From Sminthopsis crassicaudata (lineage: Eukaryota): 64,000 nucleotides of DNA. The stretch is taken from contig NC_133619.1 in the NCBI RefSeq assembly GCF_048593235.1, positions 655,419,744 through 655,483,743 of the forward strand, given 5' to 3'. The notes below the pieces were generated by a model. That model had not been told where the DNA came from and made no database searches. It saw only the letters and a list, made by a program, of their open reading frames with translations. The translations under genes were made by a program, and so were the position numbers. Below are positions 28,195 through 58,700 of this stretch, one piece after another. Numbering within the stretch: position 1 is the stretch's first letter; each line of letters starts with the position of its first letter.

Positions 28195-28545
28195 CTGCAG
28201 GAGTGGGGAGCAGAACAGAAGCTAGCAACAAGTGCCATAGAACTCATGGACTTTAAAGAGACTCATTCTAAGATGAGATTATAGGATCTAGAGGTCAGGC
28301 AGCCTGATATGTATCACATTTCCCCCCTTCATTATTAACCCGCCTGAAAGTTTGAGTGTAGATAATTAGTGGGGGAATTCTTGGCAATGACCCTGGCATG
28401 TAGTGAGCACATAACAAATGCTTATTGACTGACTGATCGCCTGGGAGATCTGAGGAAATGACCCAGAAATCAGCATGAGTAACAAGGAAACTTTCTTAAA
28501 GAGCTCAATTAGAATTTAAGCACAATGGGGCCCATTTTTAGAAAA

Positions 28546-29322
28546 CAAGATGATTGGAATGGGCCAGAACTCCAGAACTTCTGGAGAAGTGTACTTGAAA
28601 CAAAGATTCTTCCAAAAGGAGTTAACATTCAGAAGAAGATGGATATCTAGTTTAGCATGGTGATAAATAGTTCTCTGGTTCAGTATGATTGAATTAATCT
28701 TATGACATATAATGGTTTCTTGGTGATATAATGATAGGCTTATACTGAGTATGATGAATGGATTAAATTGTAATAGAGTATTTAAGAGGTCACACAATGC
28801 AGTGGCCTCTCAGTCAGAGAGGTCACAGAACAACTGCCTCTCAGTCTCCTTGTATCATCCTCTCACAAGAGATGTATTCCAGCAGCCACTGTCAGGTGAC
28901 TCCAGTGTATTCCAACAAATGATGAATTTTGATTTATTTATTTTCCATGATTAGCAAGTTATGCATAAATGACTGACAGATTCACAAGCAACTATCCTTT
29001 CTTGATACCATGTTAGCCCATAAATTCAAAAGAATAATAAAATGAAAGAAATGTTTTGGGGCTACTTCCAAATCAGGATTCATCTATGTTGACTTTCCAT
29101 TTGCCCTTTAACTGATCCCAATCAAATCCCATAATACCCACAAAACCCTTCCATTGTTTATCAAAATTGAGGGAAACTACTGCTGCCCTCTAACCTTTAC
29201 CTCACAGTCTAGTGGGCCTTTCCAGAGAGAAGACATCACCAGTATGGTTGATTCTAGAGAAAGACATGCAGGCTGGGGGCAGCAAGATCAGTCCCTTTCC
29301 AGAAAGGGAAGCAAGAAGACAG
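28546..29322 (+). repeat. Segmental duplication copy of 2749-3535
   Basis: Direct sequence comparison. Confidence 0.93.
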
Positions 29323-29334
29323 TACCTTCAAGTA

Positions 29335-31230
29335 TACTTCTCCAAAGTCCAGCCCGCTCCATCCGCTGTCTTTGCCTGGGAGGAGCAGTCCCCCGCGCCT
29401 GAGAGGAGCAGTCCCCAGGCCCGGTCTTTATTTGTGGCTGAGAGGGCCCTGGGCCTTGGTTCTCGGTGGGTGTCTCTTCTTGACATCCTGGGACTGCTGC
29501 ACCTCTCCCACGCTTTCTCTTCTGACATCACCCTCTTGCTCCCGCTTGTCCCGTGTCCCATCCCCTCGGGGTGTGGGCGAGAGTGGGGTTGGAAAAGCAC
29601 CCGAGCCATGGAGGTGGAGATCCTTCCCACAGCCAAGAAGATAGATAAGATAATGCAGAACAAGAACGCGGCCGGGGCACTGGATTTACTAAAGGAACTT
29701 CAAGACGTTCCCATGACTCTGGAATTATTGAGGTCCACAAAAATTGGAATATCGGTAAATACTGTAGGAAGCAGAGCACAGATGAAGAAGTCACATCATT
29801 AGCCAAGTCTCTCGTCACACGCTGGAAGAAGTCGGTCTCTGGGCCCTCCAAGACTGAAGAAACCAAAAAAGGGACCTGCTCACTCTTCCCAATGCAGGCC
29901 TGAGGCAAAACGAGAAAGGAGCTGCAGGAGCAAAGCAAAGGAAGAGACAAAGGCTTCTGATTCCTTCATTAAAGCTTTCCCCCGGGCACCAAGCACTTCA
30001 GATTCGGTTCCCATCAAGTGCCGGGAGTTGCTTGCTGCAGCCCTCAGAACTGGAGGTGACTACTTCGCTATTGGCGCCGATGTAGAAGAACTGGGCGCTC
30101 AGATTGAGGAAGCTGCATATCAGGAGATACGGAACAGGGACATGAAGTATCAAAACAGGCTACGAAGGAGAACAGCAAATCTCAAGGATGCAAAGAAGCC
30201 AAACTTAAGGAAAAACGTACTGTGTGGGAACATACCTCCAGATTCCTTTGCTAGAATGACTGCAGTCGAAATGGCTAGTGAAGAACTTAAAGAGATGCGC
30301 AGAAACCTGACCAAAGAAGCTATTAGAATACATCAAATGGCCCGGACGGGTGGGACCCAAACGGACCTATTTCGATGTGGCAAATGTAACAAGAAGAACG
30401 GTACCTAGACCCAGTTTCACACCCTAAGTCCTTATGAACCTATGACAACATATGTTTTCTGTAACGAATGTGGAAATAGATGGAAGTTGGTTTAGAAGAA
30501 GAAATTCGCCAGATACCTGGACACTTACAAAGGAAGATTTTGAATTAGCTTTAAAAACTAAGTCAAGAATCTAGTTTCCCTGCAAATGAGATTTTGTAAA
30601 GCAGAAAAAATCCTCGGGGTTAGTTTTTGTTTTTGTTTTTGTATTCTCTTGAAAACATTCTTAGAGAGTCAGTGTTAGGTCAGATAGGGTATGGTGTATG
30701 GTGTATGTTTAAAACTTTTTTTTCCCATTTTGATAACGAAGTCAACATTAAAGTTTTATCAATTTCAACTGTTGGTAACTTGTTTCTTTTTCTTCCAAAT
30801 GGGAAATCAACTTTAACTTTTTTTTTTTTAATCTGAAACATACACAAAAACGATTTTGCTTCTCTGTTCATGTGAAAGTGGAATTTGCATTTGTTTCTGT
30901 ACTGCCATGTTCCTACTTTATTAAAGGAGAAGAAAGATTAGTGTAATTTTGGGATTGCCAAATGTAGTGTGGTAAAGAAATCATATTTGGACAGCTGATC
31001 TAGTTTGTAGATACCATTTTCAACGAGTCTCTCCCTTTGATCATAAGGACTGTTAATAAGCCTTAGTGATTAGATATCCTTTTGCATCTGTGACTACCTG
31101 TGACCAATTGCAATTCTTGTACTTCTTTACTCTAAATTACTGCTCTTAATAGATCTTCCATGGGGGAAATTGATTTTAAATAAATTGTTTGTTAAAAGTG
31201 ATCAATTGTCCTTTTTTCTTTGTTTGATAG
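29335..31230 (+). pseudogene. TCEA1: TCEA1 (TFIIS) processed pseudogene; CDS homology 29608-30495 plus UTRs
   Basis: [27 protein letters not shown]; [25 protein letters not shown]; [41 protein letters not shown]; EPMTT.V.CNECGNRWK. No introns; frameshift near 29770 and a premature TAG at 30406. Confidence 0.95.
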
Positions 31231-31558
31231 CAGATTTTAAATTCAAATGTTAAATTTAAATTAAAAAATTTAAATTTAAACTTAAAAAAATCCTTAAGCT
31301 TGTTTTCTGTGTGATTTTGGGCAAGTCAATTAATTTCTCTCAGCTACAATTTCTTGAACAGTGAAAGGAAGAATAATAACGGCACTTACCTCCCAACATA
31401 CTTCTTAAGGTCAAATGCTGTATTTTAAAGCTCTTAGAACACGTATAGCACATAGTCAGCACAAAATAAAAGTATGGTTTCTTCCCTTTATCTTGTTTGA
31501 TTTTGGATATGTTTCCTTTAAAAAAAAAAAAGGGGTACAAATTGTCACAGACTCTTAT

Positions 31559-31853
31559 CTGTGGGAATCTGTAGAGCTCCAGTAGTGTCCCTATCTGGAC
31601 AGAAAGAGCAGACATGGCTCCTTCAATAATAGCTATTACCTTGTCCTGCCTCTCACAGCTAAAATTTGGAGTGGAGGTCAGGCCCTGATCTGACAGCCAC
31701 TGCAGGGAGCTCTCCAATGTCCTGCAATCCTCATAGTAGGTGTTGTAGATGTGAAACAACTGGGTAATGTTAGGGAAGAGCCGAGGGTCTCTGTTGATCT
31801 TCTCCACACAAAACATCAGGGCCAGAAGCTGCAAGTAATTTTTGTACAGCCAC
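31559..31853 (-). pseudogene. V2R exon-2 relic, full-length exon with mutated donor
   Basis: ORF 31340..31834: LLALMFCVEKINRDPRLFPNI...FHIYNTY...TLESSLQWLS...NFSCERQDK..AIIEGA.SALSVQIGTLLELYRFPQ. Donor reads CAG|ATAAGA instead of GT; no other V2R exons seen nearby. Confidence 0.88.
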
Positions 31854-32764
31854 CTGCAGGAGTGGGGAGCAGATCAGAAGCTAGCAACAAGTTGCACAGA
31901 ACTCAAGAACTTCAAAGAGACTCATTCTAAGATTAGATTATAGGGTCCAGAGCTCAGGCAGCCGGATATGTATCACAAACACCTCCTTTTTACATCAATT
32001 ACCCCCTTCATTATTAACCCGCCTGAAAGTTTGAGTGTAGATAATTGGTGGGGGAAATCTTGGCAATGTCCCTGGCAGGTACTAAGCACATAACAAATGC
32101 TTATTGACTGACTCATCTCCTGTGAGATGTGAGGAACTGACCCAGAAATCAGCATGAGTAACAAGGAAACTTTCTTAAAGAGCTCAATTAGAATTTCAGC
32201 ACAATGGGGCCCATTTTTAGAAAACAGCCTTCTGTTTCTGTTCAAGGAAACTGTGTAGAGAGCATTGACAAGGTTATGAAAAGCTTGTGATTTTAGGAGA
32301 TCACTGAACTTTTAAAAACTGTGCAGGTCATATGTCCTTGTTTTTCTCTAGAAAAAGAATTGGATCTAGAGGAATGGGAATGAGTAGGGAGAGGAATTAA
32401 GTGAACACTACAATTCCAAACCAAACTTAATTTCCAAAGATACACTTCATACCTACAATTTCATCCAAGTGACTTTAGTAATTTTAGATGAAAGAAAAAG
32501 ATGAGACTATTGTAGGATTTTAAAACTTGCAGCAATTTATTGGATTTCTGGCACATGAACTAATGGACAATGGGCTTATGGACATGTATAAATTCTCAAT
32601 TTATGATTATTTCATCATGTTATTTGTTACATCACTTCTAGCATGTGTCATGATACTATGCCTTCACGTAATTTCTGTAATTATAGGTAATACCTCCCAT
32701 ATTGATGGATTTAGGTTTCAAAGTCATGACCACCCTATGCTCTAAATCAAAAGAAAAGGGGAGA

Positions 32765-33207
32765 TGTTAGGTCCTTAGCAGGAGCTAAGTCGGTCCTTAA
32801 CAATTCTCTAGCTCAGGGTTTACATCTTTAGTTCACACCTTGAAAAGGAGTTTCCACCTTTAGACTTCTGAAAAGGAGTTTAGCCCTTTAAAAGGAGCAA
32901 GCTCATTGGTTGTAGGAGTTCCCACAGGCCCCTGGGAGTACCCACAATCCCCTTCTCTGGGAGGATAAAAGGAGAAGGCAGTTGGTAAGGAAGCAGTCTG
33001 GAGTGGGTTAAGGACAAGACTTCCCAGGAGAACTTCAGGGAAGCTCGAGGAGATTCAGAGCCAGGATTGAGGAAGAAGAGGATTCCAGATTCAACCTCTG
33101 CTCTGGCTGGAGGCTCCAGAAGAAGCCTGCTCGGGGAGAAAAGGATTTCAAGAAAAGAAACCTCCTCCCAGAGAAGGATTTTAATTGACGGACAAGAGAA
33201 CACTACA
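32765..33207 (+). mobile_element. Solo ERV LTR (TG...CA), directly upstream of the T-box ORF
   Basis: Begins tgttaggtccttagc and ends gagaacactaca; internal ATTGG and GATAAAAGG; resembles a marsupial LTR family from memory; no clear TSD. Confidence 0.75.
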
Positions 33208-33244
33208 GACCGGCCCTAAGGAGGACGGGGCCAGTCCAGCAGCG

Positions 33245-35349
33245 ATGCTCACTCCCGCAGCCCCTCTAGGCCCTCAGGCGGCCATGCCCTTGGCCGAGAA
33301 GGCCCCAGGCCCCAGTGCCTCCGGGCAGGACCGCCCCTCCCGGGGGCCCCACAGGGAAGGCGTCGGAGCTGAGAACCAGCCCCCGATGGGCTGTGCTCCT
33401 GTCGCCCCGCAGGGCGCGGATCCCGGCCCTTCTCCTGTCTGGGCCCATCCCTCCTCCCCGAAGCAGCCCTCGGCGGCGGGGCACCAGCAGCCTCCCCTGG
33501 AGAACTGCGGCGCCGCTTGCTCCGGAACGCTCCAGGTCGTCCTCTGCAACCATTCCCTGTGGCTCACGTTCCATCGGCAGCAGAACGAAATGCGCCTCAG
33601 CAGGCCGGGCCGGGCCATGTTCCCCTTCCTGGCTTACCACATGCGGGGCATGGACCCCCGGGCCCGCTACCGCGTCTCTGTGGACATGGTGCGCGTCGAC
33701 CAGCATCACTGGCGCTATGAGGAGGCCGGGTGGGCTCCGTATGGACCCGAACAGAGCCACGTTCCCGGGAACCAGGTGTATGCGCACCCAGACTCCCCCA
33801 ACACGGGCGCGCACTGGATGGGGCGCGAGATCGCCTTTAAAATGCTCAAGCTCAGCAACGAGGAGCCCGCTGGCGGGAGCGCGCCGCGCGCCCTCCGGCT
33901 CCGGTCTCAGCACCGGTACCGGCCCCGGCTCCACGTGGAAGAAGTCGCCTGGGAGACCAGGAAGCGCCGGGCGCCCCCTCCCGGAGCCACGTCTTCAGCT
34001 TCCCCGAGACCGAGTTCATTGCCGTGACTGCTTATCGCAACCGGGAGCTCATCCGCCTCAAAATCGAGCACAATCCCTATGCCAGGGCCTTCCGCACAGA
34101 CGCGCCCTCGGCAGGAGCCTTGAGCGCCGGGCAGCCGCCGGGACCAGCCGCCGCCGCCCCCTCCTCAGAGGCGGCTCCGGACCCCGCCGGCCAACGGCCA
34201 GTGCCCCAAGAGCGCCGTGCCCGGGACCGGGAAATCTGGCCTCGCGGCACCCTGACGGACTCGGAAGCTGCAGCCCCGGGGGAAAGGGCCCCCAAGAAGA
34301 GGCGTCTGTCTCCTGGGCCTTCAGGCAGCCCCGCCATGTCCTCAGCGAGGCCCCAGCGAGCAGCCCAGGCCCAGCGGCTGCCAGCTCCAGAAGCCAGCGC
34401 CAAAGCCTCCCCAGCAGCAGCTGCTGAGCGCCCTGGCGGCCTGCTGGGAACAGAAGAGGCCGCTGTGCAGGGGGGGAACAGCGCGATCCCCGCGGCCTGC
34501 TGGGCCATGCAGCAGCCCCAGCAGCCCCTGCACTGGGGCTTGGACTGCACTCCCAGCAGCCTGCAGACCTCCACTGCTCCACTTGCCGCGTCTTATGGCT
34601 TCGGTCTAGAGGGTCTGCTCGACCTCCTGCAGGAGCCCACATTGCCGGCAGAACCCTCCCAGGACAGCGGTGGGGACAGCCGCCCATCTCTACCTCTGCA
34701 CCCTGTCCCTGGAGCCCACGGAGAGCCAAGTGTTGAAGAGCAAATCTGGCTCCTTCTGAGGCAAATAGAGCTGGAAGAGGCAGCCCTGGCTGAGGGAGCT
34801 CCCAAGAGGAGACGTTTATCTCCTGCTCCTTCAGCCAGCCAGGCAACGGGTTCAGGGAGGTCCGATGGAGAAGCCCAGGACCCGCTTCTTACAGCTGCAG
34901 CGGGCAGCCCCTCCACCTTCTCAGAAGCAGCTTTTGAGGGCCCTGGCCACCTGCTGGGTGTGCAAGAGGCTCCTATCCTGGAAAACAGGAGCGGGATCCC
35001 TGTCCTCTGGAGTGCCCCCCAGCAGCCCCAGCCATCCTTGCATTCTTTCTTTTACTCCCCTCCCAGCAGCAGCCACAGCAGGAGTCTGCCAAGCTTGGAA
35101 GATGTGGCCATGGGGCCCCCCACTTCTCCACTTGCCATGCCTCATGAGCCCAGTCCTGAGGAGGCTCTCTTCTCCCTACTGGAGGCACCCGGCTGCCTCT
35201 CAGAAAACTCCCAGGGGACCAGGAGCGACTGTCTCCCCTCTGGGCCCTCCCAGCCAATGCGTCCTGCCCCTGGAGCCCAAGAAGCCGGGATAGTGTCCCT
35301 CCATTCCAATGCTTTCTCAAATGCTGTTAATTTTTTATTGTTTGAATAA
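33245..35349 (+). CDS. TBX21-like: Intronless T-box transcription factor, TBX21/EOMES (Tbr1) subfamily-derived; ~701 aa if a 1-bp deletion at 33951-33953 is restored
   Basis: [12 protein letters not shown]...NEM....GRAMFPFL...VDQHHWRY...[27 protein letters not shown] (ORF 33185..34027), then [19 protein letters not shown]...[13 protein letters not shown] in the frame of ORF 34024..35349. DQHHWRY matches recalled TBX21 rather than EOMES/TBR1. Confidence 0.85.
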
Positions 35350-35657
35350 GCACATAAGCACCTAAATACACATACATACATATATAAACATAAATCTAAT
35401 TTTTGAAGAGACAAAAAAACCTACACATTATAATTACTTCCTTCTGCAATTTTAGTCAAGGTCGTGTATGCCTTTAACTCGTTCAGTTATAAAATATCAA
35501 ACTTCTCAGGGCAAAAGAAACCCAACTGAAGTCTCTTCCCACGCTTATATCAGTTGCATTTCAGAAGATAACTGCGGATTTTATATATCTGTTTTGTAGG
35601 CTGGTTGTAAGAGATCTTGGGAGTTTTAACATTTTCTTTTTCTTTTGGTGAGTGTGA

Positions 35658-35770
35658 AGTTACTTGCCCAGGGTCACAGTTAGAAGTATTAAGTATCTGA
35701 GTCAAATTTGAACTCAAGTCCTCCTGAATTCAGGGCTGGTGCTCTATCCACTGTGCCACCTAGCTGCCCC
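35658..35770 (-). mobile_element. Marsupial tRNA-derived SINE (WSINE1/SINE1-like); further copies at ~41480-41550, 45036-45175, 49375-49500, 50660-50790, 54085-54222, 55465-55600, 56333-56462
   Basis: gggcagctaggtggc.cagtggatagagcacc...gagttcaaat...ctagctgtgtgaccctgggcaagtcacttaacc consensus on either strand. Confidence 0.9.
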
Positions 35771-36265
35771 AGATTTACAATTTCTTAAAATATAACTAAA
35801 TTCTTTTTTTGGGTCATGGATTTTAGGAAATCCACTTCTCCTTGATATGTTTTCTTGGTTGGTTGATGTACAATTTTTCCTAGTTTTCAATGTTTGACCT
35901 TGTAATATTTTTTCATTTTCTCAAAAGATCATTGATTTTAATTGGGTATATTCTAATTTTCAGGATATTTTTTTCATTCAGATAAGATTGTATACTTCAT
36001 GTGCCATGTTGTTCATTCACTCCAGAATTCATCCTTCCTTTGCTCTCATTAAATGTCAGTATTTAACATTCATGAGGTTAATTTTTGTGGCTTCTAGCCA
36101 CAGCTAGGGCAAGGTAAGATAATTCTAAGATAATCAACTTAATTCATGTTATTTGGCAATTTTCTCTCATGTTTCAAAAACTAACATTATTCATACAATT
36201 ATTTTTATTCTGATTTTCCTAATTTTGGAATTTAGGGAAATATTTTATTAGAAATGCTATTCTAC

Positions 36266-36780
36266 CACTACATAGAATTCCCAATCCCTCTATTTTTGTC
36301 CACCTGCATTTTGGATTTCTTTCACAGGTTAATTGTATACTATTTCAAAGTCTGATTCTTTTTGTAGCAAAACAACTGTCTGGATATGTATACATATATT
36401 ATATTTAATTTATACTTTAACATATTTAAGATACACCCAGTGAAAGAATTCTGGGAGATGAGTATGACCACTATATAGAATTCCCAATCCCTCTATTTTT
36501 TGTCCACTTGCATTTTTGATTTCCTTCACAGGCTAATTGTATACTATTCCAAAGTCCGATTCTTTTTGTACAGTAAAATAACTGTTTGGACATGTATACA
36601 TATATTGCATTTAATTTATACTTTAACATATTTAACATGTATTGGCCAACCTTCCATCTTTGGGGGGGGGGGAGAGGAGGGAAAAAAATTAGAACAAAAG
36701 GTTTGGCAATTGTCAATGCTGTAAAATTACCCATGCATATATCTGGTAAATAAAAACTATAAAAAAAAAAAAATTTTAAT
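36266..36780 (+). mobile_element. L1 3' end with a ~165-bp internal tandem duplication and poly(A)
   Basis: 36266-36428 repeats at 36468-36636; ends aaattacccatgcatatatctggtaaataaaaactat(a)n. Confidence 0.85.
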
Positions 36781-38005
36781 GAAAAATAATTTTTTTTTTA
36801 AATCAAATACTAAATTCTTATCCCCAAGTCTTTACTTTTCACATTTACAAATACAAGATTGGAATTTATATGTTATCTCCCTCATATGGGACATCTATCT
36901 CAATGTGTCACAGGAACCCATTCCACTTAACAGTAACTATATGTTACAAAGCTCGCTGATGTGGCAAAGTGGTTTGTGCAAGACTAAGCGAGGATACAAT
37001 GGGGTGAGTTTTTCTGGAACTGTAGCCAACTATGGCACTCTTCTGGGGGGTCAGCTTCCTGAAAAGACCTCATTTTCCCTCAAACCCATAAACACAATTT
37101 AGCAAGATAAAGTCAAAATGGAGACCTATGACACATTTACAGATATTTTAAAAGAAAATTATAACATGTAACATATTACTTATCACACAGATGGAAAGCC
37201 AAAGAATTTAGGAATAAACAACAGAATGTAGAAGAAAATTAAGTAATAAAAACAATTTAAAGTCAGATTTAAAAAAAAAAATCTCGTCATCATTAATGAT
37301 TGAGAAAGGAGATTAAAACAATTGCTTTCCCCCATTACAAAGACCCTTCTTTGGATACCAATCATGGACTTTCAGAGAAAAACTGTATTTCCTGACCTTA
37401 ATACACAATATAAAATTGCAATGTCTAATGAGATCTATGCTGTAAGAAGAGGTCTTCCCTCATTTATTAGATTCATATATTTCATCTGCAGCAAGATTTC
37501 TACACAGAGGATGAGATCCAACTGAAAGCTTTTGTGCAAATACATTTTGTATAATGTTTCTTCGAAGTGTGAATATTGTAATTTATAGTGACCCTTATCT
37601 TCCAGGTAAGGGCAATTCTTCCTTACACCTTTTTAAGTCTTCTGTGCACTCCATATCCTCAGATGTAAACTCAGAGATGAACTTGGGCTAAAGACCTTCC
37701 TGTGCCAAGTCCATAAGACACTTCCTTCACAAGCAGAAAATCCCTGCTGACTAACAAGCTCTGTCTTCCATTTTTATGTCTTTATCCATGATTTCAATCT
37801 TCTAGGAATTTTCTGGAGGCAAATCAGGAATGAAGTGAGCCAGAATGTTTTTCCACATGGATTATATGATAGAGATTTTACATGTCTAGTCAGGGACTAA
37901 TATCTATTAAAAACTTTATCATGATCCAGACACTTAAAAGTTTTTCTCTAATGTGCACTCTCTGTTGTTAAGCAAGATTTGAACTTTTGTCTAAAATTTC
38001 CCATA

Positions 38006-39909
38006 TTAATGAGGTTTCTGTCCAATGTGGATTTTCTCATGTTTACCAAGACTTTGGCGCCGTGTGAAAGTCTTTCCACAGTCACTACATTTGTAAAGCT
38101 TCTCCCCAATGTGGATTTTATCATGTGCTATGAGACAATTTTTGTATTTGAAAGTCTTTCCACAACACTTACACTCATAAGTCTTCTCTGCAGTGCGGAT
38201 TGTCTGATGGTAAGTAAGACTGCTGCGACTTGTGAAAGTCTTTCCACATTCATTACATTCATAAGGCTTCTCTCCAGTGTGGATTCTCTTATGGATAGCA
38301 ACATGGGAGCGTTGGGTAAAAGCCTTTCCACACTCATTACACTCATAAGGCTTCTCTCCAGTGTGGATTCTCTGATGTGCATCAAGGGTGGAGCGCTTTG
38401 TGAAAGCCTTTCCACATTCATTACAGTCATAAGGCTTCTCTCCAGTGTGGATTCTCTGATGTGCATCAAGGGAGGAGCGCTTTGTGAAAGCCTTTCCACA
38501 GTCATTACACTCATAAGGCTTCTCTCCAGTGTGGATTCTCTGATGTGCATCAAGGGAGGAGCGCTTTGTGAAAGCCTTTCCACATTCATTACAGTCATAA
38601 GGCTTCTCTCCAGTGTGCATTCTCTGATGGACAACAAGACAGGAGGGATATATGAAAGCCTTTCCACATTCATTACATTCATTAGGCTTTTCTCCAATGT
38701 GGATTCTCTGATGTGCATCAAAGTAGGAATGGTTTGTGAAAGCCTTTCCACAGTAATTACATTCATAAGGCTTCTCTCCAGTGTGGGTTCTCTTATGGAT
38801 AGCAACATGTGAGCGTTGTGTAAAAGTCTTTCCACAGTCATTACATGCATAAGGCTTCTCTCCAGTGTGGATTCTCTGATGGATATCAAGCTTGAAACGT
38901 TGTGTAAAAGCCTTTCCACAGTCATGACATTCAAAAGGCTTCACTCCAGTGTGGATTCTCTGATGTTCACAAAGATTGTAACTCCGTATGAAAGCCTTTC
39001 CACATACATTACATTTATAAGGTTTCTCTCCAGTGTGCCTTCTCTGATGGTTCGTAAGATTGGAATGAGATGTGAAAGTCTTTTCACATTTGTCACATTC
39101 ATAAGGCTTCTCTCCAGTATGGGTTCTCTTATGTGCTTTAAGATAGGATTGCTTTGTGAAAGCCTTTCCACATTCATTACATTCATAAGGCTTCTCTCCA
39201 GTATGGGTTCTCTTATGTGCTTTAAGATAGGATTGCTTTGTGAAAGCCTTTCCACATTCATTACATTCATAAGGCTTCTCTCCAGCGTGGATTCTCTGAT
39301 GTTCATGAAGAGTGTATCTCCGTGTGAAAGTCTTTCCACAGTCATTACATTCAAAAGGCTTCTCTCCAGTGTGGACTCTCTGATGGACAGCAAGACTGGA
39401 GTGACATGTAAAAGTCTTTCCACATTCATTACATAAATAAGGCTTCTCTCCAGTGTGCATTCTCTGATGTTGAGCCAAGTTGGAATAACATTGGAAATCC
39501 TTTCCACATTGATTACATTTGTAACATTGTTTTGCTGTGTGAATCCTCTCATGTTTAACAGGAGAAGATCTCTCTCTCAAAGTCTTTCCATGTTTCTTAC
39601 ATTCATAAGATTTCTCTCCAGCATGGATTCTTTGATGCTTGACAAGGGAAGAGAGTGCAGTAAAAGCTTTATCACATTCATGACACTCAGGGGTCTTCTC
39701 TTCAGGATGTATATTCTTATCTTTAGCAACATGGGAACTATTTCTTAAAGCTTTTTTGTGTATATTCCATTCACAAAGTTCCTCTCCAATGTGGTTTCTT
39801 TTGTGCTTAGCAAAAACAGCCCTGTATTCACTATATTGAAAAAGGTCTTTCCACGAGATAATTTTCAGATTTGCACTTATCTCCTTCATATCAAACTGTG
39901 TCTCTGAAT
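38006..39909 (-). CDS. KRAB zinc-finger gene, last coding exon (20 C2H2 fingers, 2 degenerate)
   Basis: Acceptor tttgtttctttcag|ATTCAGAG at 39909; open frame with repeated TGEKPY-C..C...H...H units to the stop at 38006. Confidence 0.97.
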
Positions 39910-42525
39910 CTGAAAGAAACAAACACACATGGATAAATATACCTTCTAATAATGGCTGATAATAAATCATTGACTTTTAATTTCTCCAGGCAAAAAGTTT
40001 TCAAACTGAAATGGACAGATTCATTTTTAAATACTATTAGGTCACACCAATAAAGTGATTCAATTAACAGAGTTCCACACACAATACAATGACATTGGAC
40101 CCCCACAACAAAGCTGAGACAAAGGCAAGTTGAAGGTTCTCATAATTTAGAAACCAGGCTATAAGCTCTGAATGTCTGAGCAACCTGATCCAAATCCCTG
40201 CAGCAGAGATTTAAACTGGAACCTGGTAAAGTAAGCTTCTCAGTCTATTATACTACAAAGTTGTTCTCCATTTTTCTTCCAATGCTGTCTTTGAAATTCA
40301 ATCTCAGGCAGCACCTAGCTGTGCACCCCTGGGAATATGCTTCTTTGTCTCAGTTTTGCTGTAGAGTGAAGCTAATAATTGTACCCACTTACCCAAGTTG
40401 TTGTGAGCATCAAAAGAGGTAATACCTATAAAACTCTTGGCCCACAGTAGGTACAATTAACTATTATCTTTGTTACTATGATTTTGATTCTCTCCATCTC
40501 AACTTTTCCTTCATAAACTTCCCTTCCCCTCTCTCTTTATATGCATGTCTGTTGAACATGATGTATTTCCATAACCCCCCCAAAAAAACCAACCAACTAA
40601 ACAAACAAACAAAAACACTTTCCTTTACCTGGATTAGCTAAGAATAAGTTTCATAAGCTGTTTTTTATTCTCAAACCATCTCCAAGTTTTTATGCTGGAT
40701 TTAAAACTTCTTGACAGCATCTCTTTGCATACCCAGGACTTTATGCAATGAACAGAACAGGTGCTTAATCGGTTTATTGAGTGATTAGTTCACATTACCC
40801 AGGGCTGGTCACATCACCTAAACCTATCTCAGTGCTTGCATGCTGGGCCCTCTGAAGTGCCAAATGTATGTTTCCATTTCTTTCTCTTTCCTTCTCCCTC
40901 TCACCTATGGATAAATCCTATAGTGAAGATAACAAGGGCCTAGGGCTCCTGGTGCTGTTATGAAATAACCAGGAGTCTTTCCCTCCATATCCCTAACCTA
41001 AGGGAAGCTGTCAGTTATGGAGTGAGTGACTTGGATTTAAGTGAGGGAGAGCTGCCCAAAGTCACCGGCCTCACTTTCCCACACACTGTATCCTTTGGCC
41101 AAGTACAGATCAGGATTGCTGCAGATAGCTCTGGATGCAAATGGCCAGGGGAGTCCTGGGCCTGGTTAAGGTAAGTTTCTTGTGACTGAGGCTGCACTCA
41201 TCCAGTGACAAAGAGCAATGAAGGCAAAGAATCTCCTCTCTCACCTGGGCTAAAAAAATCTCAATAAATAAAAGGGAATGAATGACTCTGGGAAGAAGCT
41301 CAGGGTTTCTGGCCAAGGCAGAAATGTTTGTGATTTACACTCAATCTAAGTCAATGAGGACCCAAACAAAGAACAATTGGGGTTTAGCAAGGGACCTATG
41401 GGTGGTCAATGAGATTCAGACTGATTTTGGTTTATAATAGAACTGATAAGGTTTGTTCCTTAAGAAAGGAATCAGAGCAGGTAGGTGGCACAGTAGATAG
41501 AATACCAGACCTGAAGTCAAGAGGAACCTAGTTCAAATCTGTCCTTGGACNNNNNNNNNNNNNNNNNNNNNNNNNNNNNNNNNNNNNNNNNNNNNNNNNN
41601 NNNNNNNNNNNNNNNNNNNNNNNNNNNNNNNNNNNNNNNNNNNNNNNNNNNNNNNNNNNNNNNNNNNNNNNNNNNNNNNNNNNNNNCAGTGGTGAGGAAA
41701 GGGGGAGAGAAATGCTTTTAAAAGCATCTGTAGGTAAGAGAATATGATATCAAAGGTGGACAGAAGGAAGCAAGGAAAGAAGGAAATAGGCAAGTAAGGA
41801 AGAAGAGAAAGGAGAGTGAAGTGAGGAAGGGAGAGAAGGAGGCAAGAACAGTCATCCAAGTGATTGATTCCAGCTTGTGCCCAGCTTTACTCAGAGGATG
41901 TTATCTGTCCTATCTCTCTATGCTTATCTGTAGCCTGCAAAGGATGGGGGGTGGGGAGGAGAAGTGCACAACACAGAACAAAAGGAAAACTACAGGAAAG
42001 CAAAAAGTGAAGGATGGTTCTGAATACAATACCTTTCATTTATGGTTTATGTAAATTTATTGTTACAGATTTTGAATCCTCCCTTATGTTCTGCTGAACA
42101 TAAAATATTATTTTTAAATTATTCTTTTTCTCTCTTTTTCTAGTTTGTTTTTAGTTTTAAATAAATATAAAAAAAGTAAAAAAAAAAAATGCTTTTTGGC
42201 TTAAGGAAGGCCTAAGAAAAGTCATATTAGACAGCCTGAGCCCTCTTTATTTGGTTGTATATAGTTTGATGGCTCCAAATTTCCAACAAAGACTTCCACT
42301 GGGATCCTTGATTCTTCATTATTAGGGAACTGAAAGGCCTTGGAGTACAAGGCCCTCATTTTACACATGAAGATACTGAGGTTCAGAGATTCAGAGAGAT
42401 GCTAAGGATCTTACTACTACAAGAGTCTGAAAAGGGATTCCAAACCACTTTTCTTGTCCCCATGCCCATCACATGAAGAAGCCTCCTGGGATAGCAGCCT
42501 GCACTTCAGCTTGCAACTCACTCAC

Positions 42526-42594
42526 CAGGACAGGAGTTCCTCAGGCCTCCTCTTTCCACATGGGAGAAGAAATCTTCTCTGGGAACTGGAAGTC
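42526..42594 (-). CDS. KRAB-B exon (69 bp, shortened)
   Basis: cccttccccag|GACTTCC...TGTCCTG|gtgagt; encodes GLPVPREDFFSHVERGGLRNSCP; in frame with neighbouring exons. Confidence 0.85.
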
Positions 42595-43465
42595 CTGGGG
42601 AAGGGGAAGATAGTGGGTGTGAGCCTTGAAACTTGTCATTTATTCCTCATTGGAACAAGGCTGGGGTGTGAGGTCCACTGGGTGGTTCCAAGGACAACTC
42701 AAAGATGGTTTTCAGGGTGCTTATTGTTAAGGAAAGAGGGCAGAGGGGAAAGGAGGCCAAATGAGCAATCTGGAACCAGAAGATCCTGATTTTGCTGCTT
42801 CCTTCACAGCAAGATGGCCATATCCCACAGCCTCAATTTTCTGGATTTTAGAGGCAGCTGGTAATACAGAGAAAGGAGCACCAGGCCTGTAGTCAGGAAG
42901 CCCTGAGTTCAAATTTAAATTTAGACATGTCCTGGCTATGTGACTCTGGGCAAGTAATTTCATCTTTTTGCTTCAGCCTCCAGACCTGAAATTGGGGATA
43001 AAGATGGCACCCAAGACAAAGGGTTTTGGTGGGGATCAAGTGCAATAATGTGCATGAAGGAAGCTTTGAGCATAAGGCCTGGATCCCAGCAAATGTATGG
43101 AAAGACCTCCTCCCTTCCCTTTTTCTTCTGTATCTGTACAGGACTTTGGGGGATGTATGAAGGAAGAAAAAGGGCCCACTTGCTAAACTGGGGGTTTATA
43201 AATTACACCAGGGGCAGTGAAGTAAAATTTTATTTTTTTTACCCAAAAGAACATTGCAAAGACAAAGTTTCCCAAGAAGAAGGGAGTTCCTTTCATTGCT
43301 CCTGTTCAGTGAAAAAGGCCAGGACCAGTTTTCAGAAGGTTTCCAGACAAAACTTCCGGGTTACACTCGTACAATGCAAAGACCACTCATAGAAGAATCA
43401 GGCAGCAGGAGGACTCTGTCTCTTAGGGACAGAAGGCAGCCTTTGGGCCTTTCTAAAAACTGTTA

Positions 43466-43678
<213 letters not shown>

Positions 43679-45422
43679 CTAAAATGCCAAGACCCAGAGG
43701 ACATAATAGTTGAAGCATGATTCATAACTGACCTAATCTAATGCTCCTCAATTTTCAGAAGGGACCTGAAGTACGGAGAAAGGGTCTGCTCAAAGGTGAC
43801 AGCCCCTACAGGATTCATAGCCAGCACTGAAACCAAAGTCCCCCAAAGACCAGTGGAATAGAGAGAAACACATTTTATATTTTCTAGTGGAATAAAATTG
43901 AGAAATCTCTTACTAGGAAATGATACTGCCTGTGCAATGAGGAAAGTTATGGATTCTATCAGAGAGAGAGATGGGGATTTTTGGAGGTGAAATCAGACAG
44001 TGCTATGTTAAGAAAATGGCATGAAGTGTTTGTGTGAAGCTAGTAAGTATTATGTGTTGTACAGCTAAAACATTTCCATGATCACTGAAGAGGAAAAAAG
44101 ATCCTGTGAATTTTGCGAAGGCCATAAATTAAGTCTAGTCCAGATGAAAACACTATCCTTCCCCCCAAATAATATTTTATTTTTGGAAATTTTTCCAAAT
44201 GCAAGTACAGATAGTTTTCAACATTCATTTTTGTAAGATTTTGTGTTCTAAATTTCAGAATCACACACTTCTTAATGGATCTGACCCAATGGTCATCAAT
44301 TTACAAAAGTGTGAAGTTCGAGCTAGCTCCCTGGCTGCCTCAGGATCAGTCAAAGTCAGGTAAGCAAAAGTCCTTGGTCTTTGGAGGGAGAAAAGAAAGA
44401 GATGGACAAATTGCCATAAGCTCTCTACCAACCTTGCTTCTCCTAGTCCTGCTGCAAAGTGAATTTGGCTTGTTTCACTCCACCCTCTAATCCTTCCTAA
44501 GATTATCTGCATATACCAAAAGATCCAGCCAGCAGGGAATAGTGAGAAGGGCCATTTTTCCAAACATATGCTAATAGAATCATTATCTAATAGGTAATTA
44601 ACCTTGAGTGCTCATTTGTCAGATTCAAGAACACCTTTTAGAGTTCCAGCCCTTTACACAAAAGCAAACTAAAGCAGAGAGAAGGGAATTTACCCAAAGG
44701 TCACATCTTGTATGAGAATACTTCCCTTTCTAAAGGCCTGTTGCTTTGACCCAAGCAATGGTAAAGGGGGAGAAAGGCAAAGTATGAGCTGAGTATGATG
44801 GAGTGATTCTAGAAGTACCTAATTGCAGTTTTGGGGTATGGAGGGGTCTCAGGAGATAAAGAAAAAATGGAATAAAAGAAAATCTACCAGGAAGCAAAGA
44901 AACGCTGGATAGTTCTGATCCATGGGTAGCATTTATTATGTAGGTTTGTTTTATTGAATCTGCTCATGTTCTGCTGGTTACTGAAATTTTTTTCTTCTCT
45001 TATTGGGTATTTAAGGTTAAAACAAATTTTAATGTGGGCTGCTAGATGGGGCAGTGGATAGAGCACTGGCCCTGAAGTCAGGAGAACCTGAATTCAAATC
45101 TGACCTCAGATACTTAATACTTCCTAGCTGTGTGACTCTGGGCAAAGTGACTGAACCCTAATTGCCTCGGGCAAAAAAAATTGTAATAATCACAAAAAAG
45201 GTAAAGACAAGAAATTCAGAGAGATTTGGGAAGATCTATGTGCCCTGAGGCAACAGGAGCTGAGCAGCAGCAGGGGGACAATTTCTGCTCTGCTACCAGC
45301 CGAGGAAAAGACAATAGCTGGGAAAGCTTCCAGGATTCTACTCCAGATAACAAGGTCAAGGGTTTCCAGGAAAGTCAGTGGCTACAAAAGGGAGCTTGGC
45401 CACAGGACACAGAGGCTAGAAG

Positions 45423-45464
<42 letters not shown>

Positions 45465-45802
45465 CTAGTGGGGAGATAGTACTGATATCTGCAGGATAGA
45501 CACTGATGTGTGAAGTGGTCACCCTTGTCGGGGACCTATATTGAGGGAAAATTTAAAGAAACATGTGGGGGCAGCAACTGGAGGAAGGGAGTTAGTGCTC
45601 AAGATGCCAAAGGGACAATGAATCAGTTTAAAATATAGTAGAGAGGAGGGCAGTGTTGCTATTACTGCATTTACTTTCCTGCCCATTTTTGTAAAGGATC
45701 CACAGATAAGAGAGATGGCTAGCCTGACAGACAATCCTCCAGATTTGTGGAAATGGTCTCTTGGGCGGATGTTGCCCACATTTGTGGGCAGAATACACTC
45801 AC

Positions 45803-45835
45803 CTGGGGTGGGGCTCTGTGGTTTTCAGAGGCCAT
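45803..45835 (-). CDS. First coding exon of the KRAB-ZNF gene (MASENHRAPPQ)
   Basis: ATG at 45835, phase-0 donor CAG|gtgagt at 45803. Exons total 33+127+69+1904 = 2133 nt = 711 codons. Confidence 0.75.
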
Positions 45836-45989
45836 TCCCTCTGGCTCCAGGCTCCCTGTTTGGGCCAGGCCCTGGTCCTCTTCAGGCTGCTGAGAGGGAA
45901 TGATTATAACTGAACAGATGTCATTTCCTTCTTTTCCTGGAGGTCTGAGGTCAGCTAGTCTACAGGAAATTACAGAAGGTGAGGTTCCA

Positions 45990-46620
45990 TGGAAGTTACT
46001 AAACCCCTGGCCCAGCCCTTAGGGCAGAAACCCCAACCAACAGGGGGAGGGAGGCTGAAAAGAGGGGCAGGTTTAAAAATGAAAATGGTGGAGTCAAGAT
46101 GGGAGAGAAAAGGCAGGCTATTGCCTGAACTCTCTCCAGTTTCCTAATGATGGGGGTTGAGGTCCCTTTAAGATTCCTTTCTGATTGCCCAACCCCCACA
46201 GCTGACCTTGATTCACAAATCCTGGTGAAAAGCACCCCTTTGAATATCCGGGCCCAGCCCCCCACTATCAGCTCAGCTTCCCCCAGCCCCCACCGGATCT
46301 GAGCTAACTGAAAAGCCCACCAAGAACTTGGGGTACTGCCAACAAAGCCCCTTTTAGGTATAAAAGAGCCAAATAGGAGCTCTCTCTTGGCAGGAGCCCT
46401 ACCCCCCAATGCATGGTATCCTTCTGGCCATGTGGGGGTTCCTGCCCGCCCAGTGGCCACCTCTGGCCCTGGCTTCTTTCTAACTGAACTTTACTTCCAA
46501 ATTCCTACAATAAACCTTTTATTTATCGATCTAGGTTTTCGGGCCTGTAAATTCATTTACAGGGGACACTGCACCTCATGGAATCTTTGCACCAACATAC
46601 GGGGTTCCCCCTTTCCTTTC
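45990..46620 (+). mobile_element. Solo LTR in ZNF intron
   Basis: TATAAAA at ~46359, AATAAA at ~46510, LTR-type tail gttttcgggcctgtaaattc. Confidence 0.7.
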
Positions 46621-47163
46621 TCTTTATCACTAAGAAATAACTTTCAATTAAGAATGGAGTGACAGGACCTACAAAAGAATGGTGAGAAACCATTTTCTAG
46701 CCTTAGATAATTGAGAAGAACTGCAGAAAAAAATCTGTCTCACTTGGATAAAAGGGGAACAAAGGTCCAGACCACACCAACAACTGAGGCCTACTGGTCC
46801 CTGGCAAGCCAAGATTGGGAAGTTAAGTTAATTGAATTGGTTCAGGGGAGGAGAGGAAGGGGAGGTGCAAAGTTACCAGCCTCACCTCCTCCAGAGCCAC
46901 TTGGCTCCAGTGGCAAGATATAGATCATAATGACTGGAGATGACCCTGGAAGCAGTGGAGACTTTGACCTTACGCTAATCTCTCAGCTTGAAGGAGACAA
47001 TACCCATTGAATGATTAAAGTTGGGGAAGAAATGAAGCCAAGAATGTTCTCTTTTACCCAGTCAAAAACACAATTCTGGGAGGGGAAAGTCCCTAGGGCT
47101 ATTGGCCATAGGGGCAGTCAAGAGTTTACAAGATAGAAGGGACAGGAAATAAGATGACTGGAG

Positions 47164-48871
47164 TGTGATGGTATAAACTTGAAAATGGGTTCACATTCTC
47201 TTATTCCTAATCTTCTGACTCCCTTCTTCTCCCCCACCTTCCTACAGACCCAAGAGTTGGAGGGATTTAAGGCCCCACATGGGATGAGAGTGTGTAGAAC
47301 CTCAATGTCCCCTGAGTCAGAAATCTCCCTACCAGTGATACTCAGTGTTCCCAGCATCCCTTCTCCCCAATAAACATATTATCTAGAAAATAAACTGACT
47401 GAGATTGGCTAAGATGACAGGAACAAATAATGACAAATGTTGGAGGGGATGTGGGGAAATTGGGACACTAATACATTGCTGGTGGAGTTGTGAAAGAATC
47501 CAGCCATTCTGGAGAGCAATCTGGAATTATGCCCAAAAAGTTATCAAACTGTGCATACCCTTTGACCCAGCAGTGCTACTACTGGGCTTATATCCCAAAG
47601 AAATACTAAAGAGCGGAAAGGGACCTGTATGTGCCAAAATGTTTGTGGCAGCTCTTTTTGTTGTAGCTAGAAACTGGAAGATGAACGGATGTCCATCAGT
47701 TGGAGAATGGTTGGGTAAATTGTGGTATATGAAGGTTATGGAATATTATTGCTCGGTAAGAAATGACCAGCAGGAGGAATATAGAGAGGCCTGGAGAGAC
47801 TTAAATCAACTGATGCTGAGTGAAATGAGCAGAACCAGAAGATCACTGTACACTTCAACAACAATACTGTATGAGGATGTATTCTGATGGAAGTGGAAAT
47901 CTTCAACATAAAGAAGATCCGGCTCACTTCCAGTTGATCAATGATGGACAGAGGTAGCTACACCCAGAGAAGAAACACTGGGAGGGGAATGAAAATTGTT
48001 AGCACTAATATCTGTCTGCCCAGGTTGCATGTACCTTCGGATTCTAATGTTTATTGTGCAACAAGAAAATGATATTCACACACATGTATTGTACCTAGAC
48101 TATATTGTAACACATGTAAAATGTATGGTATTGCCTGTCGTCGGGGGGAGGGAATAGAGGGAGGGGGGGTAATTTGGAAAAATGAATACAAGGGATAATA
48201 TTATAAAATATATATATATATATAATTAAAAAAAAAAAAAAAAAGAAAAGAAACTGACTGAGAGATCCAGTAAGGAGGTAAGGGATCTGAGATGCTCCAT
48301 CTCATCCTCCAGGGAAACATCAGAGGAAGCCTAAGGCTGGGAGACAATCTAGTCTGGGATTCAACTCCCAGTGATACGGGAAATCAGAAGTCAAGGACCT
48401 TGAACCCAGATTCCTTAATCCTATCTCACCCTACAAGCCAACCCCACTAATTAATCTTTCTATAGAGTTCAGCAGACACAAACCAAGTTTTCTATAGAGC
48501 TGAACTAAAGCTAAGTACCACTACTTAACTTTCAAAAGAAATGAATTAATGTTAAGTACCACCACTTAAGCTTTCTATAGATTTGAACTACCTACCACCA
48601 ATTAAACTTTCTATAACTTTACAGAAACCTACTCAAGCCTAAAACTTCTCTATTGTTTCAAAAGCCCCCAAGACCTAAACTCTAATCATTTAACTAAGTA
48701 CTCTGGCTGTACCAAGAACTATAATCTCATCTAAGAGTTTTTGTCCACAGAGAGACAGGGATCTCTCAGTGATTTAAAATAAACTTTTACTTTTTTATTT
48801 TAGAAAATTGAGTAAATTATTTTACTAAACCCACGCCTTATCTCACACATCGTAAGCCTGGATCCCCAACA
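47164..48871 (+). mobile_element. LTR-like element interrupted by an L1 insertion
   Basis: TG start, AATAAA at ~48779, CA end; sequence is continuous across the L1 TSD. Confidence 0.55.
47405..48250 (+). mobile_element. Young 5'-truncated LINE-1 with poly(A) and 13-bp TSD
   Basis: Open ORF2 C-terminus (CWRGCGEIGTLIHCWW...) at 47405..47887; A-tail; AAACTGACTGAGA at 47392-47404 and 48251-48263. Confidence 0.95.
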
Positions 48872-51800: not shown

Positions 51801-52254
51801 CTGGAATAGCAAGGAAGCCATAGTCATGAGATCCCAAAGATCTAAGGTATAAGAACCCTGCCCATAATCAGTGAGGAATAGAAAGCTTTCACATTTACAG
51901 GTTGGTAGAAAATCCCTGGTGTTTACTGAGTCTGGGAAAATTGGATCTTTAGGAAAATCACTTTGTTGATTAAATGAAAGATGCATTGGAGTCAGACAGT
52001 CTGGAATCAGGCCAACCCACAAGCAGGCTGCTGCAGTACTTACTCCAAGGGTGAGGTGATAAGAAGCTAGAGCAAGAAGGTTGAAACATCAGTAGAGAGA
52101 AGATGGATTGCATAGATGTTGCAGGGTTGACATGATGTAAGTGGGAATAAGAAACAGGATTCAATGAGGACACCTTGGTTGTGAGCCTGAGAGACTGAGA
52201 GAGTAGTGGGGCCCTTATCAGAAAGAAGGAAGAGACAAAGACAAGAAAATAAGT

Positions 52255-58479: not shown

Positions 58480-58700
58480 CTGGGACCTGCCCCTACAGAG
58501 CTGCCTTGCAGAGGTGGAGAGATCTCAGCTCCAAAAGTTCCAGTTTTCAGCCAGCTCTCTCGAGATTTCTCCTGGCCCCAAAAGTTCCCACCTTAGCCAC
58601 CTCCTGAGACTTCCCAAAATGAACTGTCTCTTTCAGTCACACCAAGATCTCAGGCCCTGAGCTGCTTTCCCGCCCCAAAACCCGCCCTCCATCACGTGAA
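58480..58700 (-). promoter_or_regulatory. Probable promoter and non-coding exon 1 of the KRAB-ZNF gene
   Basis: CpG-containing segment with GC boxes (~58670-58688) and CACGTG (~58693); minus-strand donor CCCAG|GTAGGT at 58480. Confidence 0.45.

What the first reader, a model, noticed from the sequence alone, without database searches (positions are those of the whole stretch)
33245..35349. Intronless, diverged TBX21-like T-box gene one base from a 701-aa ORF
Seen: a complete T-box without introns. Adding one G to GGG at 33951-33953 gives [16 protein letters not shown], a 14-residue linker equal to recalled TBX21 spacing, and joins both ORFs with no stops over 2.1 kb. DNA-contact regions are altered (GRAMFP for GRRMFP; NPYARAF for NPFAKGF). 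Established: canonical T-box genes are multi-exon. Inference: a marsupial-specific retrogene transcription factor, possibly with altered specificity.
Basis: partly seen in the sequence, partly recalled or inferred. Interest (0 to 1): 0.82.

Follow-up and report, generated by a model that had tools for sequence, protein, structure and literature searches.

The report
Broken copy of marsupial TBX21 retrogene
This is a young, most likely disabled duplicate of an intronless gene family that arose from the immune regulator TBX21 (T-bet) in marsupials; the family looks functional and unstudied, but this copy carries two disabling lesions.

Summary
Window 33245-35349 (+) holds an intronless T-box gene (Pfam PF00907, 131.8 and 47.4 bits) whose two reading frames are one base apart, giving 701 codons.

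Comparison with relatives changes the reading.
- It is one copy of a family that RefSeq already lists as "TBX21-like" or "uncharacterized". Members are in dunnart, Tasmanian devil, antechinus (two chromosomes) and koala (three tandem single-exon genes).
- The family sits inside the marsupial TBX21 clade (100/99 support), has lost all TBX21 introns, and lies on different chromosome records from TBX21. It is a marsupial retrogene family.
- Its T-box is under purifying selection (omega 0.31-0.37, p about 1e-6 to 1e-14). The N- and C-terminal parts have omega near 1 yet stay open.
- GRAMFP is shared by koala and dasyurids, so it is a family trait and not decay.
- The window copy lacks one base of a Cys codon (TGT/TGC in all relatives) between 33951 and 33952.
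- Its coding sequence is also cut at 35286 by about 23.6 kb of foreign DNA. The true last 56 codons lie at 58924-59094.
- A 97%-identical dunnart copy on non-collinear flanks, so most likely a paralogue, has an intact 737-codon ORF.

Verdict: most likely a pseudogenised copy of a real but unstudied retrogene family. I found no paper on it.

The parts
28539..35286 (+). Duplicated segment that carries the gene and 4.7 kb of upstream sequence. It is 97.2% identical to Sminthopsis crassicaudata CM109181.1 (L001 5317-12043).
   Evidence: megablast; blastn
33245..33949 (+). Coding sequence, frame A: 92-residue N-terminal region plus the first three quarters of the T-box (235 intact codons).
33521..34095 (+). 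T-box DNA-binding domain (SGTLQVVL to NPYARAFR), contiguous in the DNA but split by the frameshift.
   Evidence: Pfam PF00907; PDB 5T1J (TBX21) is the best solved relative of the family's T-box; coordinates
33608..33625 (+). GRAMFP motif (GRRMFP in canonical T-box proteins). The first Arg is kept and the second is Ala. Koala and all dasyurid copies share this.
   Evidence: PMC11828899 (R69 is the first Arg and contacts guanine 5); PMC9071441 (T-bet R163A/R164A is the standard DNA-binding mutant)
33677..33679 (+). Window-specific Phe to Ser change (TTT to TCT) at a position that is Phe in every other family member and in TBX21.
33950..33951 (+). Broken codon: TG remains of a Cys codon (TGT in the dunnart paralogue, TGC in antechinus). 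One base is deleted between 33951 and 33952.
   Evidence: DNA alignment A1
34025..34027 (+). Premature TGA reached in frame A, 25 out-of-frame codons after the deletion. The predicted product is 260 aa and lacks T-box profile positions 136-182.
33952..35286 (+). Rest of the coding sequence in frame B, homologous to the paralogue. It holds the end of the T-box and a fast-evolving Pro/Ala/Ser-rich C-terminal region.
34228..34314 (+). First copy of the repeated T-bet C-terminal motif (EIW ... APKKRRLSP). TBX21 has EEIW ... SKRRRVSP once.
34738..34824 (+). Second copy of the same motif (QIW ... APKRRRLSP).
35287..58923 (.). About 23.6 kb absent from the intact paralogue, interrupting the coding sequence. 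No target-site duplication or flanking LTR pair was seen. It contains a scaffold gap (Ns at 41551-41686) and a C2H2 zinc-finger ORF. Its first 63 bases supply 20 foreign codons and the TAA at 35347-35349.
58924..59094 (+). Detached true 3' end of the gene: 56 codons (QSLQQEIW ... DSLFLE) plus stop. It is collinear with L001 12044-12214 and resembles the koala C-terminus.

Best explanation
The window holds a young duplicate (about 3% diverged) of a marsupial-specific, intronless gene family. The family arose by retroposition of an mRNA of the TBX21 (T-bet) lineage and was then amplified by tandem and segmental duplication.

The family most likely encodes working T-box proteins. These have a constrained DNA-binding domain followed by a fast-evolving, disordered tail that carries two or three repeats of T-bet's C-terminal EIW...KRRR(L/V)SP motif.

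This copy has been disabled in two ways:
- A one-base deletion inside the T-box ends the reading frame after 260 residues. It removes the last strands and the helices that insert into the DNA minor groove.
- About 23.6 kb of unrelated DNA, which includes a zinc-finger gene, separates the last 56 codons from the rest.

Shown here: the domain, both lesions, the intact relatives, the phylogeny, the loss of introns and the selection on the T-box.

Inferred: that the deletion is real and not an assembly slip, that the family is expressed, and what the family does.
For: - Domain and frameshift.
- The deleted base is a T/C of a Cys codon in every relative, in a non-homopolymer context (TG[T]GG).
- Second lesion at 35286|35287, with the tail at 58924-59094.
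- Intact 737-codon single-exon ORF in the dunnart paralogue. Three tandem intact ORFs of 727, 735 and 737 codons in koala. A 686-codon ORF in devil.
- All TBX21 exon junctions are fused in the family, whereas antechinus TBX21 and the Dromiciops TBX21-like gene keep their introns.
- TBX21 and the copies lie on different chromosome records in antechinus, dunnart and koala.
- Phylogeny: the family sits inside marsupial TBX21 (100/99), with branches tens of times longer than true TBX21.
- Codon models: T-box omega 0.32 (2dlnL 54), dasyurids alone 0.365 (p 1.4e-6); N-terminus 0.93 and C-terminus 1.03.
- Keeping the C-terminal ORF open at that divergence is very unlikely under neutrality (roughly 13-36 nonsense hits expected).
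- Window-lineage changes are 9 nonsynonymous to 1 synonymous and include Phe to Ser at an invariant site.
- No gene product identical to either window ORF is on record.
Against: - The deletion rests on one assembly, and I could not inspect reads.
- The 23.6-kb block contains a scaffold gap (Ns at 41551-41686), so the detached tail may belong to another copy. Both breakpoints do lie inside contigs.
- Both antechinus copies also lack an in-frame C-terminal region yet keep an intact T-box. C-terminal truncation alone may therefore be tolerated.
- The 9:1 and 8:0 nonsynonymous-to-synonymous counts are too small to separate relaxation from positive selection (P about 0.1).
- I have no expression data for any member.
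Confidence: 0.72

Rival explanations
1. The copy is functional. The one-base gap is an assembly error, and the altered C-terminus is tolerated, so the locus encodes a roughly 700-aa T-box factor.
For: - Only one base separates the frames, and no stop occurs over 2.1 kb.
- The copy is only about 3% diverged from an intact paralogue.
- The antechinus copies show that proteins without the C-terminal repeats are annotated.
- The region is segmentally duplicated and hard to assemble, and Ns are present.
Against: - The missing base is not in a homopolymer.
- The CDS runs into non-homologous sequence inside a contig at 35287.
- An invariant Phe is replaced by Ser, and the derived changes are 9 nonsynonymous to 1 synonymous.
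- No matching gene product is on record.
Confidence: 0.12
2. The whole family is non-functional. It would be a set of retropseudogenes whose long ORFs persist through high G+C content and gene conversion, and the window copy is simply one more dead copy.
For: - Omega is near 1 in the N- and C-terminal regions.
- The antechinus copies have C-terminal frameshifts.
- The sequence is G+C rich (0.66), and alternative frames carry ORFs of up to 370 aa.
- Copies group by species, which is compatible with gene conversion.
Against: - T-box omega is 0.31-0.37, and omega = 1 is strongly rejected, also within dasyurids.
- Intact ORFs of about 730 codons survive in koala (three), dunnart and devil, across a synonymous distance of about 0.8.
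- The base-contacting Arg, the aromatic pair of the minor-groove helix and the terminal Arg are conserved.
Confidence: 0.1
3. The frameshifted copy makes a 260-aa truncated T-box protein that acts as a decoy or dominant-negative partner. Intronless transcripts escape nonsense-mediated decay.
For: - The upstream 4.7 kb is shared with the intact paralogue, so the copy could be transcribed.
- T-bet's DNA-binding domain also mediates protein contacts such as GATA3 (PMC9071441).
Against: - The product would lack about a quarter of an immunoglobulin-like fold and is unlikely to be stable.
- No other family member shows this truncation.
- Nothing in the data calls for this reading.
Confidence: 0.04

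Closest known systems
TBX21 / T-bet (vertebrate T-box factor, Tbr1 subfamily)
   Same: - TBX21 is the best solved-structure match for the family's T-box (PDB 5T1J, E 1.3e-71).
- The family nests inside the marsupial TBX21 clade.
- The linker is the same 14 residues.
- The C-terminal EIW...KRRR(V/L)SP motif is shared.
   Different: - The family has no introns, while TBX21 has six coding exons.
- It lies on other chromosome records.
- T-box identity to TBX21 is only about 50-58%, whereas true TBX21 is over 90% identical across all marsupials listed.
- The second Arg of GRRMFP is Ala.
- The C-terminal motif is repeated two or three times.
- The family is multi-copy.
RefSeq 'T-box transcription factor TBX21-like' models of Sarcophilus harrisii (XP_031817678.1), Antechinus flavipes, Phascolarctos cinereus (XP_078005215-17) and LOC141551652 of Sminthopsis crassicaudata
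   Same: - Same family.
- The window protein pieces are 96-98% identical to LOC141551652.
- Identity to the devil model is 57-68% over its length.
- T-box identity to the devil and antechinus models is about 74-84%.
- All have a contiguous T-box.
   Different: - Those copies have an uninterrupted T-box.
- The window copy has the one-base deletion and the 23.6-kb interruption.
- The RefSeq models are automatic predictions without a published description.
Intron-containing TBX21 duplicate of marsupials (Dromiciops XP_043859205.1; dunnart XP_074121578-80)
   Same: - It is sister to the intronless family in the trees (98/98 and 100/99).
- It is also marsupial-only in these searches.
- It also evolves fast.
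   Different: - It keeps the TBX21 intron positions.
- It keeps GRRMFP and NPFAKGF.
- It lies on the same chromosome record as TBX21, so it is a DNA-level duplicate and not a retrocopy.

Membership tests
T-box transcription factor family (Pfam PF00907) | T-box domain match above the curated threshold | tested here: met
   131.8 and 47.4 bits against a cut-off of 26
T-box transcription factor family (Pfam PF00907) | Uninterrupted domain able to fold and place the C-terminal helices in the minor groove | tested here: not met
   In this copy the frame breaks between profile positions 135 and 143, and a stop follows at 34025-34027. The requirement is met in the paralogue and the other species.
T-box transcription factor family (Pfam PF00907) | DNA-contact residues: both Arg of GRRMFP, the aromatic pair of NPFAKxF, and the terminal Arg | tested here: inconclusive
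   The first Arg (base contact, PMC11828899) is kept and the second is Ala. The aromatic pair reads Y/F and F, and the terminal Arg is kept. DNA binding was not measured.
TBX21 (T-bet) orthologue | Groups with TBX21 and not with EOMES, TBR1 or other T-box genes | tested here: met
   Nested in mammalian, and specifically marsupial, TBX21 with 100/99 support
TBX21 (T-bet) orthologue | Six-exon structure at the conserved locus, as a single strongly conserved copy | tested here: not met
   The family is intronless and lies on other chromosome records. The true TBX21 exists separately and is over 90% identical across marsupials.
Processed retrogene | All parental introns absent and a location unlinked to the parent | tested here: met
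   A single tblastn segment spans all TBX21 exon junctions in koala, dunnart, devil and antechinus. The contig records differ from that of TBX21.
Processed retrogene | Poly(A) remnant and target-site duplication | tested here: inconclusive
   None is visible after the stop. No similarity to the TBX21 3' flank was detected. This is expected for an old insertion.
Processed retrogene | Open reading frame kept by selection | tested here: met
   Met for the family: T-box omega 0.31-0.37 (p 1e-6 to 1e-14) and long intact ORFs. Not met for the window copy.
Duplicated pseudogene (this copy) | Frame-disrupting lesion relative to an intact close paralogue | tested here: met
   One-base deletion and the 23.6-kb interruption, against the intact 737-codon ORF in L001
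Duplicated pseudogene (this copy) | Lesion confirmed in reads or in the population, and no transcript | not testable with these tools
   I had no access to reads or RNA-seq. Exact-product look-ups found nothing.

The most novel reading that the evidence does not exclude
Australidelphian marsupials (koala and dasyurids at least) keep an amplified, intronless T-bet-derived gene family. Its T-box has been held under purifying selection for tens of millions of years, even though it natively carries Ala at one of the two arginines whose joint mutation abolishes T-bet DNA binding in the laboratory. Such proteins could be factors with changed DNA affinity or specificity, or antagonists of T-bet and its partners, in a lineage-specific role that might be immune, germline or embryonic. 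No paper describes this family.
Probability: 0.45. Interest if true: 0.6.

Novelty: new member of a known kind. Interest (0 to 1): 0.4.

Why it matters
T-bet is the master regulator of type-1 immunity, and it is a single, highly conserved gene in every vertebrate examined here. A constrained, multi-copy retrogene family derived from it in marsupials would be an unusual lineage-specific addition to the T-box repertoire. It would also be a natural experiment on the GRRMFP DNA-contact motif. For this window the practical message is more modest. The locus should be annotated as a disabled duplicate, and any functional work should use the intact copies: dunnart LOC141551652 read as a single 737-codon exon, the devil and antechinus copies, and the koala array.

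Tried and rejected
- Exact-product look-ups for both window ORFs and for the 737-aa paralogue ORF. I hoped for independent contigs or transcripts, and none is on record.
- Literature searches for TBX21-like, retrogene, marsupial, koala, devil and dunnart. The papers found by the TBX21-plus-koala and TBX21-plus-devil searches give no sign, in title or abstract, of dealing with this family. I did not open them. The TBX21-like and retrogene searches found nothing. The dunnart T-box search found only unrelated papers.
- A shared C-terminal duplication as evidence that the retrocopy came from the intron-containing duplicate. Rejected: the koala repeats resemble each other (157 bits) far more than they resemble either Dromiciops repeat, so the duplications may be independent or homogenised.
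- The 23.6-kb block as a simple transposon or ERV insertion. Rejected: no flanking direct repeats or LTR pair, no target-site duplication and no large TE ORF. It carries a C2H2 zinc-finger ORF instead.
- Splicing across the block. Rejected: the junctions do not carry GT...AG.
- Conserved upstream synteny between dunnart and the devil, antechinus or koala copies. No nucleotide similarity was found upstream of about 35 bp before the ATG.
- Earlier notes of this scan hold no other T-box finding in this genome.

Full report
**1. What is in the sequence**

Window 33245-35349 (+) contains two overlapping ORFs in different frames. Frame A (33245-34027) matches Pfam T-box PF00907 profile positions 2-135 of 182 (E 3.2e-38, 131.8 bits). 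Frame B, from 33949, matches positions 143-181 (E 2.7e-12, 47.4 bits). The domain is contiguous in the DNA. The frames are one base apart near 33951. Read through with one unknown residue, the ORF has 235 + 1 + 465 = 701 codons. GRAMFP is at 33608-33625 and NPYARAFR at 34072-34095.

**2. Relatives**

Protein searches with the two pieces taken apart found a small set of close relatives, all marsupial:
- LOC141551652 of Sminthopsis crassicaudata: its aligned pieces are 96% and 98% identical to the window's two ORFs.
- 'TBX21-like' of Sarcophilus harrisii.
- Two 'TBX21-like' proteins of Antechinus flavipes, on different chromosome records.
- A UniParc entry without a name.
- 'TBX21-like' of koala.

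True TBX21 proteins follow at about 50-58% identity in the T-box. Marsupial TBX21 is the best of them.

I fetched the loci and found the following:
- The T-box, and most of the protein, is a single tblastn segment in each copy.
- Koala has three tandem single-exon ORFs of 727, 735 and 737 codons, 5.2 kb apart.
- Devil has a 686-codon ORF.
- The dunnart locus L001 has an uninterrupted 737-codon ORF at 10001-12211. The RefSeq model instead splices out of it to an exon 66 kb away.
- Both antechinus copies keep the T-box, but their C-terminal repeats are out of frame.

**3. Origin**

Antechinus TBX21 (L007) has its T-box spread over exons across 15 kb. A second marsupial 'TBX21-like' gene, found in Dromiciops and dunnart, keeps those intron positions and lies on the same chromosome record as TBX21. 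The family studied here has none of these introns and lies on other chromosome records.

In maximum-likelihood trees the family is monophyletic (100/100). It is sister to the intron-containing duplicate (98/98 and 100/99). Both sit inside the marsupial TBX21 clade (100/99), in a polytomy with didelphid and australidelphian TBX21.

True TBX21 of twelve marsupials falls in one 90%-identity cluster, while the family's branches are tens of times longer. The reading 'marsupial-specific retrogene derived from the TBX21 lineage' is therefore supported. Two things remain open: whether the parent was TBX21 itself or its DNA duplicate (both branches are long), and whether the event predates the opossum split.

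**4. Selection**

Results from GY+F3X4 codon models:

| Region and set | omega | Test against omega = 1 |
|---|---|---|
| T-box, six copies | 0.32 | 2dlnL = 54 |
| T-box, without the window copy | 0.31 | p 4.5e-14 |
| T-box, dasyurids alone | 0.365 | p 1.4e-6 |
| N-terminal region | 0.93 | not significant |
| C-terminal region | 1.03 | not significant |
| C-terminal region, three dasyurid copies | 1.36 | p 0.07 |

The C-terminal 415-437 codons nevertheless stay open in koala, dunnart and devil across a synonymous distance of about 0.8. A rough count of stop-creating substitutions expects 13-36 nonsense hits if the region were unconstrained. The family therefore behaves like a protein-coding gene with a constrained DNA-binding domain and a fast-evolving, probably disordered tail.

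The tail carries two copies (koala) or three copies (dunnart L001) of T-bet's C-terminal EIW...KRRR(V/L)SP motif. The repeats within a species resemble each other more than they resemble those of the Dromiciops gene.

**5. DNA-interface motifs**

GRAMFP is shared by koala and all dasyurid copies. NPYARAF is the dasyurid form and NPFATAF the koala form. These are old family traits and not decay of this copy.

In human brachyury, R69 contacts guanine 5 of the T-box element, and F213 and F217 of the last helix insert into the minor groove (PMC11828899). By my own count of the sequence, R69 is the first Arg of GRRMFP. In mouse T-bet, R163A/R164A is the standard DNA-binding mutant, and R324 is also needed for binding (PMC9071441).

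The family keeps the first Arg, an aromatic pair (Y or F, then F) and the terminal Arg. It has Ala at the second Arg. Weakened or altered DNA binding is thus plausible but untested.

**6. Why this copy is probably dead**

(a) A DNA alignment shows the window lacks the third base of a Cys codon. This codon is TGT in the dunnart paralogue and TGC in antechinus. The loss falls between 33951 and 33952, in the context TG[T]GG, which is not a homopolymer. Frame A then runs 25 codons to a TGA at 34025-34027. The product would be 260 residues without the last quarter of the T-box, including the minor-groove helix. The first Met in frame B is at 34336, beyond the domain.

(b) Homology to the intact paralogue ends at 35286 and resumes at 58924. 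The last 21 codons of the '701-aa ORF', including the stop, are foreign sequence. The true last 56 codons plus stop lie at 58924-59094. They match the paralogue's tail and resemble the koala C-terminus.

The intervening 23.6 kb has no flanking repeats and no target-site duplication. It contains a 653-residue C2H2 zinc-finger ORF on the minus strand and a run of Ns at 41551-41686. Both breakpoints lie inside contigs, but the two contigs are joined across that gap.

(c) I polarised the differences from the paralogue with the other dasyurids. The window lineage has 9 nonsynonymous and 1 synonymous change, including Phe to Ser at a site invariant in the family and in TBX21. The paralogue has 4 and 3. 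Within the T-box the two copies differ by 8 nonsynonymous and 0 synonymous changes. These counts are suggestive but too small to be significant.

(d) No gene product identical to either window ORF is on record.

**7. Context**

The duplicated unit (28539-35286, 97.2% identical to L001) includes 4.7 kb of upstream sequence with a TFIIS/Med26-like ORF. Similarity to the devil and antechinus copies begins only about 35 bp before the ATG. This fits the scan's separate note of an LTR ending just upstream.

The flanks of the window and of L001 are not collinear. This argues that the two are paralogous loci and not alleles or orthologues. I could not fix the window's own species beyond 'a dasyurid, apparently Sminthopsis'.

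**8. Verdict**

- The family is catalogued by automatic annotation, but as far as my searches reach it is not described in any paper.
- I rate the locus as a new, broken member of a known kind. Interest is moderate and comes from the family, not from this copy.

Noticed in passing
window 38006-39970 (-): A 653-residue ORF with at least 16 C2H2 zinc fingers (zf-C2H2 E 1e-104). It shows up as an 84-bp tandem periodicity. It lies inside the 23.6-kb block that splits the T-box gene.
   Followed up: partly
window 29212-29802 (+); also window 3423-3539, L001 5981-6535 and 27511-27977: An ORF with a TFIIS/Med26 helical-bundle domain at its end (E 4.8e-7). It is part of the duplicated unit upstream of the T-box gene. 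L001 carries an annotated 241-aa Med26/TFIIS_M gene at the equivalent place.
   Followed up: partly
window 18691-19416 and 19811-21466 (+): The two long ORFs that another first-stage note calls an intronless SMG5 paralogue gave no Pfam family at E <= 0.001.
   Followed up: partly
L001 10001-12211 (S. crassicaudata CM109181.1): The RefSeq model LOC141551652 (498 aa) leaves a continuous 737-codon single-exon ORF at residue 496 and splices to a tiny exon 66 kb away, next to a partial second copy of the gene's 3' part (L001 76451-78037). The single-exon reading matches the koala genes better.
   Followed up: partly
L005 4760-17469 (koala NW_027555625.1): Three tandem, nearly identical single-exon TBX21-like genes spaced 5.2 kb apart. 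Two of them have identical T-box regions.
   Followed up: partly
L006 10001-20198 (Dromiciops CM033368.1); dunnart XP_074121578-80: A second, intron-containing TBX21 duplicate on the same chromosome record as TBX21, with a tandemly duplicated last exon in Dromiciops. One dunnart isoform is named 'eomesodermin homolog' although it groups with TBX21.
   Followed up: partly
L003 near 11741-11747 and L004 near 11140-11430 (Antechinus flavipes): Both antechinus copies keep an intact T-box, but their C-terminal repeat region is shifted out of frame. The annotated proteins end early, at 531 and 476 aa.
   Followed up: partly
protein P0011 (Vidua chalybeata 'EOMES protein, partial'): It groups with bird TBX21 (100/100) in the tree, so the name is probably wrong.
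   Followed up: no
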